The notes beneath the pieces are model-generated. The model saw only the letters and a program-made list of their open reading frames with translations. It was not told the origin of the DNA and ran no database searches. The position numbers and the translations under genes were made by a program. A stretch of 64,000 nt of DNA from Leucoraja ocellata (lineage: Eukaryota). This document shows, in pieces, positions 25,418 through 62,856 of this stretch (its first letter is position 1; each line of letters begins with the position of its first letter). The stretch lies in NCBI GenBank assembly GCA_036785375.1, contig JAWMAR010000471.1, forward strand, positions 62,001 to 126,000, in the 5' to 3' direction.

Positions 25418-25431
25418 GCGCCCTCTGGTGG
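25418..25431 (-). promoter_or_regulatory. Predicted RSS-proximal CTCF site (B1)
   Basis: CCACCAGAGGGCGC, 24 bp 3' of the nonamer. Confidence 0.65.
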
Positions 25432-25494
25432 CCTCTCGAAAGAGGACCGTCGTACGGTTTTTGTTTGAACCCTCTATCTCTCTGCAACAGTGTG

Positions 25495-25941
25495 GGCGCC
25501 ATGGCGCAGTAATATGTCGCAGCGTCCGAAAGGCGTATCCTGGAGATATTTAACGGAAAGGTCTTACTCTCTTCGTGTAAAAAGGCAGAGAATCTGTTGG
25601 AAATATCTGGAGCTGGTTGGGCTAACCCATCGCGGAATCCCTTCAGTAGGTATCTCGGCGCATGTCCGGGATAGTGGGTGTACCAGAAAAGGTGTTAGAA
25701 GTGAACTTTGTGGAGTAGTTGCAGTTTAACGTTACGTCCAGCCCCTTCCTCGGCTCTCAGCGCAGCCGGACTCTGGGACACCGACTCCTCGCCGACTCCT
25801 GTAACAATGAATACGACATGCAGTCACCCTGGGAAATAATCTGACTCCCTTCACGGTCACAAACGCAATTTAAACGCCAACTCACCTGCCCGAACGAGAA
25901 TAAATATCAGGAAGGGGGGAGAGGGGGGAGAGGGGAAACAT
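25495..25941 (-). pseudogene. TCR V pseudogene B1
   Basis: Leader 25941-25886 with a 10-nt expansion; V exon 25798-25495 with frameshifts and a stop; RSS CACACTG(25494-25488)-23-ACAAAAACC. Confidence 0.85.
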
Positions 25942-26675
25942 TACTCCTAATTGGGACAACGCGCTGAAAGAATGCAGCGGCGTTAGTTTGTTTCCGGCGT
26001 TTTGCATCATTTTATGCGCAAGGGGGCGTGTTACTTAGTTACTGTTGTTGATTGGCCAATTTCCCATACCGAAGGCTACTTTTGCACATTGAAAACGCGC
26101 TATTGTGTCTAAAGTCCGTCATGACNNNNNNNNNNNNNNNNNNNNNNNNNNNNNNNNNNNNNNNNNNNNNNNNNNNNNNNNNNNNNNNNNNNNNNNNNNN
26201 NNNNNNNNNNNNNNNNNNNNNNNNNNNNNNNNNNNNNNNNNNNNNNNNNNNNNNNNNNNNNNNNNNNNNNNNNNNNNNNNNNNNNNNNNNNNNNNNNNNN
26301 NNNNNNNNNNNNNNNNNNNNNNNNNNNNNNNNNCTCCCCCCTCTCCTTCTCTCTCTCTCTCTCTCTCACCCTCACGCGTTCTTCCAGAAAATCCCAGAGA
26401 AATCTGGCACCTGATTTATTTCCAAGCACATAAACCTCATTAACTATCTCAAGGAACATTTGGTGGAGGGGAAATCACCCTCGATATGACGCGGCTGTGT
26501 GGCGGCGCGGTGTATTGCCGCCCCCTGAGATACAGGGCGTCGCAAAATAATTAGAAGATAGAACATAATCACTTCTGCCCGAATCTCATCAATATCCTTC
26601 CATTGAAATCATATCCTATGACCGTTGTTAGTTTTAGTGGATAAAACTTCACCTCCAGAAGCTACCGGTGCAAAG

Positions 26676-27153
26676 TCCTGGGATGTCAGGACTTTCATAT
26701 GAAGAAAGACCGGATAGGCTCGGCTTGTACACGCTAGGATTTAGAAGATTGAGGGGGAATCTTATAGAAACTTACAAAATTCTTCAGGGGTTGGACAGGC
26801 TAGATGCAGAAAGATTGTTTCCGATGTTGGGAAGTCCAGAACAAGGGGGTCACAGTTTAAGGATAATGGGGGAAATCTTTTAGGACCGAGATGAGAAAAA
26901 CATTTTGCACACAGAGAGTGGTGAAACTCTGGAATTCTCTGCCACAGAAGGTAGTTAAGGCCAGTTCATTGGCTATTTTGAGAGGGTGTTAGATGTGGCC
27001 CTAGTGGCTAAAGGGATCAGGGGGTATGGAGAAAAGGCAGGTACAGGATATTGAGTTGGATGATCAGCCATAATCATAATGAATGGCGGTGCAGGCTCGA
27101 AGGGCCGAAAGGCCTATACTCTTGCACCTATTTTCTATGTTTCTAGGTTTCTA
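26676..27153 (+). mobile_element. CR1 3' fragment that is part of the family B duplication unit (related copies 33281-33729, 35170-35648, 37324-37790, 39162-39640, 41035-41495, 50598-50950; minus-strand 52378-52740, 60233-60732, 62026-62492)
   Basis: Shared 5' junction gtgcaaa|(c/g)tcctg.gatg in five or more copies; peptide GLSYEERLDRLGLYSLEFR. Confidence 0.85.
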
Positions 27154-58993: not shown

Positions 58994-59519
58994 ATTTTTG
59001 CTTTATATGATGGGATAAGTTGCAGACTTGATTATTAAAATCTAAGAATGTTGTAACATTGCTACTGCGAGNNNNNNNNNNNNNNNNNNNNNNNNNNNNN
59101 NNNNNNNNNNNNNNNNNNNNNNNNNNNNNNNNNNNNNNNNNNNNNNNNNNNNNNNNNNNNNNNNNNNNNNNNNNNNNNNNNNNNNNNNNNNNNNNNNNNN
59201 NNNNNNNNNNNNNNNNNNNNNNNNNNNNNNNNNNNNNNNNNNNNNNNNNNNNNNNNNNNNNNNNNNNNNNNNNNNNNNNNNNNNNNNNNNNNNNTTAACA
59301 TCAGTTATGAGAAAGTAGCAAATCACCAGTCCTGAATCATAGAAACGCCCTCTTCTGCACAAAATAAGATGCTTCTCCTGGTATTCGCTTCATTGACACC
59401 CACCCACCAAGGAAACGGATGGTGAGCGGTCTATTCTCTCGCTTCATTCACACAGAACACACGACGGAAGAACACTAATGCCGCTCCATTCTTTCAGCGT
59501 TCTGACCAAATTTGGAGAC

Positions 59520-59953
59520 ATGTTCTCCATTTGCTCCTTCCTGATGATTCTTCTCGTGCGACCAGGTGAGTTGGTGTTTAAATAGTTATTGTCCGTCAAC
59601 AGAGCCCGATCCTATCCAGGAGTTATCACTCGTCGTATATATTGTTACAGGAGTCGGTGAAGATTCAGTGATCCAGAGTCCGGCTGAGCTGAGGGTCGAG
59701 GAAGGGCAGAACGCAACGATAAATTGCAGCTACTCCACAGCAAACAGTGGTGCATATCTCTTTTGGTACATCCAATATCCCGGTCAGGCGCCTAGATATA
59801 TGCTGAAAGGATTCAGTGAGGGGCCAGCCCTGCCAAGTCCAGATTCTCCGACAGATTGTCTGCTGTCTTACACAAAGGGAGCAAGACATTTCCTTTAAAT
59901 ATCGCAGGGATGCAGCTTTCGGACTCGACGACATATTACTGCGCCATGACGCC
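59520..59953 (+). pseudogene. TCR V segment B12 (1-nt deletion in FR3)
   Basis: Leader 59520-59565; V exon 59651-59953; perfect RSS CACAGTG(59954-59960)-23-ACAAAAACC; CTCF-like CCACCAGAGGGCGC 60016-60029. Confidence 0.82.
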
Positions 59954-61317
59954 CACAGTGTTGCAGTGCGATCTGGGGTTCGAACAAAAACCACCCGCGA
60001 GATTCCGGCGAACACCCACCAGAGGGCGCTGCTGCACGACACATCCATAGTACATCTGATGCAGGAGGGATCGGCCCCATAACGATCCGCTTAATCTGCA
60101 ATATTCCCACCTTTTCCCATGGGAAACGCGTCGTATCCTCGCCAACATCATTCCAAACAATCTCATCACCCTGCTTCCTCGAGTGCATATATTGTGGCAT
60201 TTATCGGCTGACGTAATGGATGGATTAATATTTTAGAAACATAGAAAATAGGTGCAGGAGTAGGCAACTCGGCCCTTCGAGCCTGCACCGCCATTCAACA
60301 TGATCATGGCTGATCATCCAACTCAGTATCATGTACCTGCCTTCTCTCCATACCCCCTGATCCCTTTAGCCACAAGGGCCACATCTAACTCCCTCTTAAA
60401 TATAGCCAATGAACTGGCCTCAACTACCCTCTGTGGCAGAGAGTTCCAGAGATTCACCACTCTCTGTGTGAAAAAAGTTCTCCTCATCTCGGTTTAAAGG
60501 ATTTCCCCCTTATCCTTAAGCTGTGTCTCCTTGTCCTGGACTTCCCAAACATCGGGAACAATCTTCCTGCATCTAGCCTGTCCCACCCCTTAAGAATTTT
60601 GTAAGTTTCTAAAGATCCCCTCTCAATCTCCTAAATTCTAGAGAGTATAAACCAAGTCTATCCAGTCTTTCTTCATAAGACAGTCCTGACATCCCAGGAA
60701 TCAGTCTGGAATGAAAGTCTGACATCCCAGGAGTTTGCACTGGTAGCTTCTGGGGCTAAAGTTTGATCCACTGAAGCTAACAACGGTCAATCGATCGTCA
60801 CAAGATATGATTGGAATGGAAGGATATTGATGAGATGCGGGCAGAAATGATTATGTTGTATGTTCTAATTATTTTGCGGTGCGGTGCCTCTTGGATCTTC
60901 CGGAANNNNNNNNNNNNNNNNNNNNNNNNNNNNNNNNNNNNNNNNNNNNNNNNNNNNNNNNNNNNNNNNNNNNNNNNNNNNNNNNNNNNNNNNNNNNNNN
61001 NNNNNNNNNNNNNNNNNNNNNNNNNNNNNNNNNNNNNNNNNNNNNNNNNNNNNNNNNNNNNNNNNNNNNNNNNNNCTTTAACTTATGCCGAGTTAACATC
61101 AGTTATGAGAACGTAGCCAATCACCAGTCCTGAATCATAGAAACGCCCTCTTCTGCACAAATAAAATGCTTCCCCTGGTAATCTCTTCATTGACACCCAC
61201 CACACCAAGGAAACGGTTCGTGAGCGGTCTATTCTCTCGTTTCATTCACACAGAGCACACGACGGAAGAACACTAATGCCGCTCCATTCTTTCAGCGTTC
61301 TGTCCAAATTAGGAATC

Positions 61318-61744
61318 ATGTTCTACATTTGTTCCTTCCTGATCATTATTCTTGTGCGACCAGGTGAGTTGGTGTTTAAATGGTCATTGTCCGTCACAGA
61401 GCCCGATCCTATCCAGGAGTTATCACTCGTCGTATTTATTGTTACAGGAGTCGGTGAAGATTCAGTGTCCCAGAGTCCGGCTGAGCTGAGGGTCGAGGAA
61501 GGGCAGGACGCAACGATAAATTGCAGCTACTCCACAACTCCATACAGTCACTTTTGGTACATCCAACATCCTGGTCAGGAGCCGAGATATGTGCTGAAAG
61601 GATTCAGTGAGGGGCCGGCCCAGCTACGTCCAGGTTTCTCCGACAGATTTTCTGCTGTCTTACACAAAGTGAGAAAGACATTTCCTTTAATTATCGCAGG
61701 GATGCAGCTTTTGGACTCGACGACATATTACTGGCCCATGAGGC
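61318..61744 (+). pseudogene. TCR V segment B13 (second Cys replaced by Trp)
   Basis: Leader 61318-61363; V exon 61448-61744 ends YYWPMR; RSS CACACTG(61745-61751)-23-ACAAAAACC. Confidence 0.8.
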
Positions 61745-62856
61745 CACACTGTTGCAGTGCGATCTGGGGTTCGAACAAAAACCACCCGCGAGATTCCGGC
61801 GAACATTCACCAGAGGGCGCTGCTGCACGATACATCCATAGTACATCTGATGCAGGAGGGATCGGCCCCATAACGGTCCCGCTTAATCTGCAATATTCGC
61901 TCCTTTTCCCATGGGAAACGTGTCGTATCCTCGGCCACATCATTACAAACAATCTCATCACCCTGCTTCCTCGAGTGCATATATTGTGTGCATTTATCGG
62001 CTGAGGTAATGGATGGATTAACATTTTAGAAACATAGAACCTAGGTGCAGGAGTAGGCAACTCGGCTCGTCGAGCTTGCACCGCCATTCATTATGATTAT
62101 GGCTGATCATCCAACTCAGTATCCTGCACCTGCCTTCTCTCCATACTCCTGATCCCTTTAGCAACAAGGGCCACATCTTATTCCCTCTTAAATATAGCCA
62201 ATGAACTGGCCTCAACTACCTTCTGTGGCAGTGAATTCAAGAGATTCACCAATCTCTGTGTGAAAAATGTTTTTCTCATCTACTTCCCAAAAGATTTCCC
62301 CCTTATCCATAAAACTGTGGCCCCTTGTTCTGGACTTCCCCAACATCGGGAACAATCTTCCTGCATCTAGCCTGCCCAACCCCTTAAGGCTTTTGTAAGT
62401 TTCTATAAGATCCCCCTCAATATTCTAAATTATACCGAGTACACGCCGAGTCTATCCAATCTTTCTTCATATGATAATCCTGACATCCAGGAGTTTGCAC
62501 CGGTAGCTTCTCGGGCTGAAGGTTGATCCACTGAAGCTAACAACGGTCTATCGATAGTCACAATATATGATTGGAATGGAAGGATATTGATGAGATGCGG
62601 GCAGAAGTGATTATGTTCTATTTTCTGATTATTTTACTGTGCGGTTCCTTCACTTTGCGATGCCGTGTATCTCGGGGGGGCTGCAATACACCGCGCCGCC
62701 AGACAGCCGCGTCATACGGAGGGTGATTTCCCCTCCACGAAATATTCATTGAGATAGTTCATGAGGTTTATGTGTTTGAATTAAATCAGGTGCCAAATTT
62801 CTCTGTGATCTTCCGGAAGAACGTGTGAGGGCGTGAGAGAGAGGAAAAGAGAGAGA

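What the first reader, a model, noticed from the sequence alone, without database searches (positions are those of the whole stretch)
25418..61820. Fixed-spacing CTCF motif immediately 3' of the RSS in family B/C/D TCR V genes: a candidate ancient RSS-CTCF module
Seen: a 14-bp CTCF-core match lies 23-25 bp past the nonamer and is oriented with V transcription. B genes have (C/T)CACCAGAGGGCGC at 25418, 27367, 32064, 33922 (1 mismatch), 35874, 37997, 39845, 42969, 46450, 51163, 52153, 60016 and 61807. D genes have TCACTAGGTGGCGC (47879, 57213), CCACCAGGTGGCGT (53631) and TCAGCAGATGGCGC (55720). It is degenerate in C1 (29646) and D2 (49495). The flanks of B and D genes are otherwise dissimilar, yet four different spellings all fit CCASYAGRKGGCRS at the same offset, which argues for selection rather than passive duplication. 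Established: mouse proximal Igh VH genes carry RSS-adjacent CTCF elements that impede cohesin loop extrusion and promote RAG access, whereas mouse Tcra V CTCF sites are mostly promoter-associated. Inference: this fish TCR locus uses an Igh-like RSS-CTCF mechanism, implying deep ancestry or convergence. I am not aware of it being described for cartilaginous fish but cannot search.
Basis: partly seen in the sequence, partly recalled or inferred. Interest (0 to 1): 0.85.

Follow-up and report, generated by a model that had tools for sequence, protein, structure and literature searches.

The report
CTCF-type motif beside TCR V-gene RSS
Three of four T-cell-receptor V-gene families in this fish locus carry a strong, sequence-constrained CTCF-type site a fixed 23-25 bases behind their recombination signal, the layout known from mammalian antibody heavy-chain V genes, which hints that loop-guided V(D)J recombination may be very old.

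Summary
All 19 recombination signals (RSS) of families B, Bp, C and D are followed by a CTCF-type core. It lies on the V sense strand, 23 (B, C), 24 (Bp) or 25 (D) nt after the 23-RSS nonamer. Sixteen of 19 score 15.9-21.0 bits on a recalled CTCF matrix, and these are the only 16 hits of 15 bits or more in the 64 kb (0.4 expected). Three are decayed. Family A (13 genes) has none.

B and D are old paralogues (dS 1.2-1.7). Their flanks are 24-44% alike, the motif 71%. Lineages differ at 4-9 of 19 motif positions, all of low information. The motif is not part of a high-copy repeat.

The closest known thing is the RSS-associated CTCF element of mouse and human Igh proximal VH genes, which has a fixed 17-19 bp spacing, one orientation, and is present in only some families. 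I found no description for TCR V genes or non-mammals in the searched library.

CTCF binding, any effect on V use, and conservation in other species are untested. Motif integrity does not track V-gene integrity here. First readers of this scan noted the same motif in other windows of this genome; I did not check those notes.

Verdict: a real, constrained element and a new member of a known kind. The mechanism is inferred.

The parts
25418..25494 (-). Bp module: 23-RSS (heptamer starts at 25494), 24-nt spacer, CCACCAGAGGGCGC at 25418-25431. The V exon has a stop codon.
   Evidence: (21.0 bits)
27367..27442 (-). B module: RSS, 23 nt, TCACCAGAGGGCGC. The V exon is frameshifted.
   Evidence: 17.1 bits
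29646..29721 (-). C module: RSS, 23 nt, decayed motif ACGTTAGAGGGCGC. The V exon is open.
   Evidence: (11.6 bits)
32064..32139 (-). B module with intact motif. The V exon is open.
   Evidence: 15.9 bits
33922..33997 (-). B module whose motif has G to T at an invariant G (TCACCATAGGGCGC). The V exon is open.
   Evidence: 9.1 bits
35874..35949 (-). B module with intact motif. The heptamer is CACACCG.
   Evidence: 17.1 bits
37997..38072 (-). B module with intact motif. The V exon is open.
   Evidence: 17.1 bits
39845..39920 (-). B module with intact motif. The V exon is open.
   Evidence: 15.9 bits
42969..43044 (-). B module with intact motif. The V exon is frameshifted.
   Evidence: 17.1 bits
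46450..46525 (-). B module with intact motif. The V exon is open.
   Evidence: 17.1 bits
47879..47956 (-). D module: RSS, 25 nt, TCACTAGGTGGCGC. The V exon has stop codons.
   Evidence: 16.5 bits
49495..49572 (-). D2 module: RSS, 25 nt, dead motif CCACCAGGTCACGT (GG to CA). The V exon is open. It is a 96%-identical twin of the gene at 53566.
   Evidence: 7.2 bits
51163..51238 (-). B module with intact motif. The V exon is open. I read this gene in full.
   Evidence: 17.1 bits
52092..52166 (+). RSS remnant at the gap edge (5 of 7 heptamer letters), 23 nt, TCACCAGAGGGCGC. The V body is lost in the gap 51892-52091.
   Evidence: 15.9 bits
53566..53644 (+). D module: RSS with 24-nt spacer, 25 nt, CCACCAGGTGGCGT. 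The V exon is open.
   Evidence: 20.4 bits
55656..55733 (+). D module: RSS, 25 nt, TCAGCAGATGGCGC. The V exon has stop codons.
   Evidence: 18.5 bits
57149..57226 (+). D module: RSS, 25 nt, TCACTAGGTGGCGC. The V exon is open.
   Evidence: 17.3 bits
59954..60029 (+). B module: consensus heptamer, 23 nt, CCACCAGAGGGCGC. The V exon is frameshifted.
   Evidence: 20.5 bits
61745..61820 (+). B module with intact motif. The V exon is open but the conserved second Cys is Trp.
   Evidence: (17.1 bits)

Best explanation
Each B, Bp, C and D V gene carries a genuine CTCF-binding element next to its RSS.

Shown:
- A high-scoring CTCF-type core sits on the V sense strand 23-25 nt after the 23-RSS nonamer.
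- It has been kept by purifying selection while the surrounding non-coding DNA diverged to saturation.

Inferred mechanism, by analogy with mouse Igh proximal VH genes:
- Bound CTCF faces, with its cohesin-blocking side, away from the V gene. For a V gene that joins by deletion, that direction is toward the D/J recombination centre.
- Cohesin extruding chromatin past RAG held at the recombination centre stalls there.
- The adjacent RSS dwells longer at RAG, which raises use of that V gene.
- Same-orientation sites about every 2 kb would also make the array a graded barrier to extrusion.

The fixed spacing may be the closest packing of a full CTCF zinc-finger footprint next to the nonamer-bound RAG. 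This last point is inference only.
For: Motif strength:
- 16 of 19 RSS-adjacent sites score 15.9-21.0 bits, p 2e-6 to 4e-8 per position.
- These 16 are all of the 16 hits of 15 bits or more in the window. A first-order Markov null gives 0.4 per window (20 simulations).
- The printed human VH CTCF consensus from PMC6746451, with up to 3 mismatches, gives 23 matches against 3.61 expected. Fifteen of them are RSS-adjacent.

Geometry:
- 19 of 19 sites lie on the V strand, at 23-25 nt.

Constraint:
- dS between B and D is 1.2-1.7, and between B and C 0.76-0.85.
- Inter-clade identity is 0.71 in the motif. It is 0.44 in the spacer before the motif and 0.33 then 0.24 after it.
- Parsimony changes per site: nonamer 0.11-0.22, heptamer 0.57-0.71, motif 1.07-1.21, spacer before the motif 1.72-1.88, after the motif 2.0-3.3.
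- The 7 highest-information columns show 4 changes where 12-14 are expected, Poisson p 0.002-0.007. All 4 fall in the three decayed copies.
- The five intact lineages differ at 4-9 of 19 positions, always at low-information positions. The same number of random substitutions keeps the score in at most 0.8% of 50,000 trials per pair, for 10 of 10 pairs.

Not a transposon:
- Contig depth over the motif bins is like that over the V exon bins. Neighbouring repeats reach 1e4 to 1e7.

Context from the literature:
- The MA0139.1 motif with orientation bias marks TAD boundaries in little skate (PMC10115646, passages).
- Mouse RSS-associated sites impede extrusion and drive VH5-2 use (PMC10293834, passages).
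Against: - There are no occupancy, contact or repertoire data.
- The matrix was recalled from memory, although the IUPAC and printed-consensus scans agree with it.
- Motif integrity does not track V integrity. Seven of 7 defective V genes keep a strong motif, and all 3 decayed motifs sit next to open V exons (Fisher p 0.25). In mouse 7183 and Q52, by contrast, non-functional members typically lack the site (PMC6746451, passage).
- Family A (13 genes) does without any CTCF motif.
- V genes on both strands carry the motif in their own orientation. Within this window, orientation therefore follows the gene, not the locus.
- The direction of J-C is unknown.
- Most copies are recent duplicates, so only about 5-6 lineages are independent.
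- I obtained no cross-species comparison.
Confidence: 0.55

Rival explanations
1. These are real CTCF sites, but their job is architectural or insulating rather than promoting RAG access. They would bracket each 2-kb V unit, shield V promoters from neighbours, or stop repeat-borne heterochromatin a little over 100 bp downstream from spreading into the RSS.
For: - Many B units also carry a second, antisense CTCF-like motif about 100 bp upstream of the ATG. It scores 14.7 bits in 6 copies and 9.4-11.0 in 6 more. This gives a divergent pair around the gene, and divergent pairs are the boundary signature described for skate (PMC10115646, legend passage).
- A very high-copy repeat starts a little over 100 bp after the B motif.
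- Pseudogenes keep the motif.
Against: - A fixed 23-25 nt distance to the nonamer is not needed for insulation.
- D genes have no promoter motif.
- The same geometry in mouse Igh has a shown recombination role (PMC10293834, passages).
Confidence: 0.2
2. The motif is hitch-hiking. It arose once in the ancestor of B, C and D and has simply been copied with the V genes. It has no present function.
For: - The 12 B-family sites outside Bp sit in flanks that are nearly identical for about 100 nt.
- Three copies have decayed without loss of the V reading frame, and pseudogenes retain the motif.
- Orientation follows the gene through an inverted duplication.
Against: - Between clades, synonymous sites are saturated and downstream flanks cannot be aligned.
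- Even so, the 7 high-information positions are unchanged in all 5 intact lineages.
- All 4-9 differences between lineages are compatible with the matrix.
Confidence: 0.15
3. The conserved element is bound by another factor, such as an E protein at CANNTG or another zinc-finger protein, or it is an extension of what RAG recognises.
For: - Two D spellings contain CAGGTG or CAGATG.
- The element is close to the nonamer.
Against: - CANNTG is present in only 2 of 5 intact lineages. B, Bp and Db lack it.
- The pattern of invariant and variable positions follows the CTCF matrix.
- As far as I recall, RAG contacts beyond the nonamer are not known.
Confidence: 0.05

Closest known systems
RSS-associated CTCF-binding elements of mouse and human Igh proximal VH genes (Ciccone et al. 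2019, PMC6746451; function summarised in PMC10293834)
   Same: - A CTCF core lies at a fixed short distance downstream of a V-gene 23-RSS nonamer.
- There is one orientation relative to V transcription.
- The motif is far more conserved than the spacer, whose length but not sequence is kept.
- It is present in some V families and absent in others (11 of 16 mouse VH families; here B, Bp, C and D but not A).
   Different: - The locus is TCR alpha/delta-like V genes, not Igh.
- The animal is by all signs a cartilaginous fish.
- The spacing is 23-25 nt to CCA. That equals 21-23 in the paper's numbering, against 17-19 in mouse and 19 or 48 in human.
- The genes are about 2 kb apart.
- There is no link between the motif and V-gene integrity.
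- Binding and function are not shown.
Promoter-associated CTCF sites of mouse Tcra/Tcrd V genes (Loguercio et al. 2018, PMC5859386, Table 2 and text passages)
   Same: - The locus type is the same.
- There are many sites per V array, most in one orientation (129 of 144 point to J-C in mouse).
   Different: - Mouse sites lie upstream of V promoters or between genes, not beside the RSS.
- Here all 16 strong sites are RSS-adjacent.
- The weaker promoter motif here points the other way.
Oriented CTCF motifs at TAD boundaries of the little skate (Marletaz et al. 2023, PMC10115646)
   Same: The same motif model works in a cartilaginous fish and shows orientation bias, so a CTCF reading of the motif is reasonable in this clade.
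   Different: Those are boundary sites found genome-wide in fin tissue. Nothing was reported there about antigen-receptor loci in the passages I read.

Membership tests
RSS-associated CTCF-binding element (Igh proximal VH type) | Strong match to the CTCF core motif | tested here: met
   16 of 19 sites score 15.9-21.0 bits on the recalled MA0139.1-like matrix. The IUPAC scan and the printed hVH-CTCF consensus agree.
RSS-associated CTCF-binding element (Igh proximal VH type) | Fixed short distance downstream of the V RSS nonamer (17-19 bp in mouse; 19 or 48 bp in human) | tested here: met
   The distance is 23 nt (B, C), 24 (Bp) or 25 (D) in 19 of 19 sites. It is fixed, but 2-6 nt longer than in mammals once the paper's 2-nt earlier start of the core is allowed for.
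RSS-associated CTCF-binding element (Igh proximal VH type) | Single orientation with respect to V transcription | tested here: met
   19 of 19 sites lie on the V sense strand, including the inverted block.
RSS-associated CTCF-binding element (Igh proximal VH type) | Motif conserved much more than the RSS-to-motif spacer | tested here: met
   Inter-clade identity is 0.71 against 0.44. Changes per site are 1.07-1.21 against 1.72-1.88, and about 0.57 at the 7 high-information columns.
RSS-associated CTCF-binding element (Igh proximal VH type) | Functional family members have the site and non-functional ones typically lack it (mouse 7183, Q52) | tested here: not met
   7 of 7 defective V genes keep a strong motif. 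8 of 11 open V exons do.
RSS-associated CTCF-binding element (Igh proximal VH type) | CTCF binds in vitro and in vivo (EMSA, ChIP) | not testable with these tools
   No ChIP, CUT&RUN or ATAC data could be reached.
RSS-associated CTCF-binding element (Igh proximal VH type) | Mutation lowers recombination-centre contact and V use | not testable with these tools
   This needs genetics or repertoire data.
Transposon-borne CTCF site | The motif lies inside a dispersed high-copy repeat | tested here: not met
   In run X1 the depth in motif bins (79-1334) is of the order of the V exon bins (152-885). Repeat bins reach 2e4 to 1.6e7 (table 2, 140-nt bins).
E-box (E-protein site) | CANNTG kept in all lineages | tested here: not met
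   It is present in 2 of 5 intact lineages only (Da CAGGTG, Dc CAGATG).

The most novel reading that the evidence does not exclude
The pairing of a 23-RSS with a sense-oriented CTCF site about two helical turns behind the nonamer may be an ancestral feature of V genes. It would be older than the split of Igh and TCR alpha/delta V segments and would date to the origin of jawed vertebrates. Cohesin- and CTCF-guided presentation of RSSs to RAG would then be as old as V(D)J recombination itself, not a mammalian Igh refinement. The weak but repeated similarity of the family-A flank to the D flank, including a decayed copy of the motif, would be a trace of repeated loss of the module.
Probability: 0.2. 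Interest if true: 0.85.

Novelty: new member of a known kind. Interest (0 to 1): 0.62.

Why it matters
RSS-associated CTCF elements are central to the current model of how RAG finds V genes by loop extrusion. In the papers I could search, they are described only for mammalian Ig loci. Finding the same geometry under sequence constraint in TCR V genes of a cartilaginous fish would show one of two things. Either the RSS-CTCF coupling is ancient, or it is an easily re-evolved solution.

The window also offers natural experiments. It contains near-identical V genes with and without a working motif, and a whole V family without it. These make the question testable with thymus repertoire and chromatin data.

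Tried and rejected
- Relatives for a cross-species test: the search for homologous proteins with the B V exon alone found nothing. 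No candidate shared three 5-residue words. The tool sees only proteins 0.55-1.75 times the query length, so longer V-J-C chains were out of reach. I searched single V exons only and left the joined leader+V step out.
- Read laying on 47700-51890, which holds no N. Contigs of three runs are about 98-99% like the window in the listed pieces, so they are the same or a sister species. One run is about 90% alike. Its contigs stop at the motif edge (49497 and 49510). Only 40 of 483 differences are shown. I could not tell whether the motif is kept in the relative. The call did show that the motif is not in a high-copy repeat.
- CpG retention as a sign of germline hypomethylation: uninformative. The whole window has CpG o/e of 0.80.
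- Link between motif and V integrity: none (Fisher p 0.25).
- E-box, transposon-borne site and RAG extension were considered and rejected (see the rivals and the membership test).
- Direction of J-C: the scan's notes did not show it, so convergence with a recombination centre could not be judged.
- V-domain identity: all four families match Pfam V-set. PDB hits for B and D include TCR alpha chains and Ig light chains, and family A gives mixed Ig and TCR hits. The alpha/delta assignment is therefore an inference from these hits, the 23-RSS and the dense V-only array.
- Prior description: five full-text searches (and 16 for Tcra) found no paper describing RSS-adjacent CTCF sites in TCR V genes or in any non-mammal.
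- Papers seen: passages of PMC6439775, PMC8679779, PMC10115646, the bioRxiv preprint 10.64898/2026.10.19.759930, PMC5859386, PMC6746451 (abstract and passages), PMC10293834, PMC9911811 and PMC7696796. All other papers I saw as search listings only.

Full report
WHAT IS THERE

The window is a dense array of V-set gene segments. Each has a leader exon, a short intron, a V exon ending in YYCA(M/L), and a 23-spacer RSS.

My RSS scan printed 37 rows. I kept 31 as V-gene RSS: 13 of family A (heptamers at 82 to 22176, all on the minus strand) and 18 of families B, Bp, C and D (25494 to 61745). I dropped 4 overlapping 13-spacer alternatives. I also dropped 2 plus-strand rows (11773, 16728) that have no V-like end before them; I did not follow those up. 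A nineteenth B/C/D RSS is a remnant that starts at the edge of the gap 51892-51091 region, more exactly at 52092 beside the gap 51892-52091.

V exons of B and D give PDB hits that include TCR alpha chains and Ig light chains. Those hits, the 23-RSS and a V-only array with genes every 2 kb make a TCR alpha/delta-type locus the best reading. That reading is an inference. The animal is not named by any tool. First-reader notes of germline-joined V-J clusters elsewhere in the genome (unchecked) fit a cartilaginous fish.

CHECK OF THE OBSERVATION

All 13 B-type matches, the 4 D-type matches and the 2 degenerate copies are at the stated coordinates. Chance expectations are 0.03 and 0.68 matches.

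In 19 of 19 cases the motif is on the V sense strand. It starts 23 nt (B, C), 24 nt (Bp) or 25 nt (D) after the nonamer.

On gaps: none of the 23 heptamers I checked out of 31 (all 18 B/C/D and 5 of 13 A) has an N within -630 to +460. The modules themselves are therefore continuous sequence. Only the site at 52153 has lost its V gene in a gap. Copy number in a gapped tandem array remains uncertain. Positions 52092-64000 are an inverted copy, 93-97% identical, of roughly 45700-51890. The sites are therefore far from independent.

STRENGTH OF THE MOTIF

I scored the window with a CTCF count matrix that I recalled (MA0139.1-like), so the scores are approximate.
- 16 of 19 RSS-adjacent sites reach 15.9-21.0 bits out of a possible 27, p 2e-6 to 4e-8 per position.
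- These 16 are the only hits of 15 bits or more on either strand of the 64 kb. A Markov null gives 0.4 per window.
- The three exceptions are C at 29646 (11.6 bits), B at 33922 (9.1 bits, G to T at an invariant G) and D2 at 49495 (7.2 bits, GG to CA).
- Family A has nothing. The best sense-strand score in the 200 nt from each heptamer is at most 2.7 bits in 13 of 13 genes.
- As a check independent of my memory, I used the human VH CTCF consensus printed in PMC6746451 with up to 3 mismatches. It gives 23 matches against 3.61 expected: 15 RSS-adjacent, 6 in B promoters and 2 elsewhere. It misses the sites at 29646, 33922, 55720 and 57213.

SELECTION OR PASSIVE COPYING

Within family B the flanks are nearly identical for about 100 nt. 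Those copies say nothing either way. The informative comparison is between lineages: B, Bp, C and three D lineages.
- Synonymous divergence is 1.2-1.7 between B and D, 0.76-0.85 between B and C, 0.54 within D, and at least 1.9 between A and all others. Neutral sites between B and D are saturated.
- In a six-lineage alignment, inter-clade identity is 0.62 in the V exon, 0.90 in the heptamer, 0.96 in the nonamer, 0.51 in the RSS spacer and 0.44 between nonamer and motif. It is 0.71 in the motif (the decayed C copy included), then 0.33, 0.24 and 0.17 further downstream.
- Parsimony over all 18 complete modules gives the same order on two different trees.
- The 7 highest-information columns carry 4 changes, all in the three decayed copies, where the neighbouring spacer rate predicts 12-14 (p 0.002-0.007).
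- The five intact lineages differ from one another at 4-9 of 19 positions. Every difference lies at a low-information position, so scores stay at 17-21 bits. The same number of random substitutions does that in at most 0.8% of 50,000 trials, in 10 of 10 lineage pairs.

This is the pattern expected if binding competence for CTCF is what is kept.

Caveats: there are only about 5-6 independent lineages. The matrix is recalled. At least one gene is a mosaic: D at 47956 groups with 55656 by its V exon and with 57149 by its flank.

NOT A TRANSPOSON

When contigs of four public runs were laid on 47700-51890, the bins holding the motifs had depths like those of the V exons. Two neighbouring stretches (48400-48680 and 50360-51060) reach 1e4 to 1e7. 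The repeat starts a little over 100 nt after the B motif, judged at 140-nt bin resolution.

EVIDENCE AGAINST A SIMPLE FUNCTIONAL READING

- Seven V genes are defective. Six have stops or frameshifts and one has lost the second cysteine. All 7 keep a strong motif.
- All 3 decayed motifs lie beside open V exons. The split is 8 of 11 against 7 of 7 (Fisher p 0.25).
- In mouse 7183 and Q52 the opposite holds (PMC6746451, passage).
- A whole family (A) does without the motif.
- V genes on both strands carry it in their own sense.
- No occupancy, contact or usage data could be reached.
- The only cross-species material, a run about 90% like the window, did not cover the motif in the rows shown.

HOW IT MOST LIKELY WORKS

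Shown: a constrained CTCF-type site at a fixed place and on a fixed strand behind the RSS.

Established elsewhere:
- In mouse Igh, RSS-associated sites lie precisely 17-19 bp after the nonamer. The spacer is conserved in length but not in sequence. More than 98% share one orientation, and 11 of 16 families have them (PMC6746451).
- These sites point toward the 3' regulatory region (PMC6439775, passage).
- They impede loop extrusion past the recombination centre. The adjacent VH becomes accessible, and deleting the VH5-2 site cuts its use 50-fold (PMC10293834, passage citing Jain et al. 2018, which I could not open).
- In the little skate the same motif model marks TAD boundaries with an orientation bias (PMC10115646), and a 2026 preprint places CTCF-dependent looping at the base of vertebrates (10.64898/2026.10.19.759930, passages).

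Inferred: CTCF bound here stalls cohesin coming from the RSS-distal side and holds the RSS at RAG. That the 3' end of the motif is the cohesin-facing side is recalled knowledge.

The paper's 14-mer begins 2 nt before CCA. The spacing here therefore corresponds to 21-23 in its numbering, a few nucleotides longer than in mammals.

COMPARISON AND NOVELTY

The structure meets four of the five sequence-level features of the Igh RSS-associated element. It fails the link with gene functionality. The two experimental features could not be tested.

Searches for CTCF together with shark, teleost, TCR or 'RSS-associated' terms found only mammalian Ig work. I file it as a new member of a known kind.

OTHER NOTES OF THIS SCAN

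First-stage notes report the same motif 24-25 nt behind the nonamer in other windows of this genome, 345 kb and 520 kb away and on other pieces. I could not read those windows. They are leads that the feature is locus-wide, not support.

VERDICT

The element is real and constrained. The Igh-like mechanism is plausible but unproven. Deep ancestry is open.

Noticed in passing
window 27978-27996, 32668-32686, 40449-40467, 42053-42071, 43572-43590 (+) and 63437-63455 (-); weaker copies at 30262, 34583, 38667, 47120 (+) and 59343, 61141 (-): A second CTCF-like motif (TATCCACAAGGGGGCGTTT, 14.7 bits on the recalled matrix) lies about 100 bp upstream of the ATG of B-type genes, antisense to the V gene. 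With the RSS motif it forms a divergent pair around the gene. Half the copies are weakened (9.4-11.0 bits) and D genes have none.
   Followed up: partly
window 45700-51890 versus 52092-64000: This is an inverted segmental duplication, 93-97% identical, meeting head to head at the assembly gap 51892-52091. All V genes left of the gap are on the minus strand and all to the right are on the plus strand. It may be a real inversion or a scaffolding error.
   Followed up: partly
window, family A flanks about +33 to +48 after the nonamer, e.g. below 4311, 2642, 16976: Family A sub-lineages share TCAGC(A/G)TC(G/T)GCGCG after otherwise different flanks. The stretch aligns with the D-family spacer and motif (best z 4.8, 1 of 300 shuffles as good; 7 of 36 comparisons with z over 2.5). 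It looks like a decayed copy of the CTCF motif.
   Followed up: partly
window 41704-42030 (-): A truncated B-type V relic has the promoter, leader, intron and first ~125 nt of the V exon. It also has the promoter CTCF-like motif at 42053. It has no 3' half, no RSS and no RSS-adjacent motif.
   Followed up: partly
window 47956 gene versus 55656 and 57149: This gene is a mosaic paralogue. Its V exon and intron group with the gene at 55656, but its RSS and flank group with the gene at 57149. That suggests gene conversion or unequal recombination within family D.
   Followed up: no
window 48400-48680 and 50360-51060: These are very high-copy repeats. Summed contig depth is 1e4 to 1e7 in four public runs of at least two related organisms. 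The second repeat starts a little over 100 nt downstream of the B-type motif.
   Followed up: no
window 51241-51540 versus 39923-40210 (B paralogues): Recent B paralogues show more non-synonymous than synonymous change (dN 0.10, dS 0.07), and family A does so nearly (0.17 against 0.20). This fits diversifying change among young V copies.
   Followed up: no
window 61745 gene: The V exon is open, but the conserved second cysteine is replaced by tryptophan (YYW instead of YYC). The gene is probably non-functional, yet it keeps a 17.1-bit motif.
   Followed up: yes
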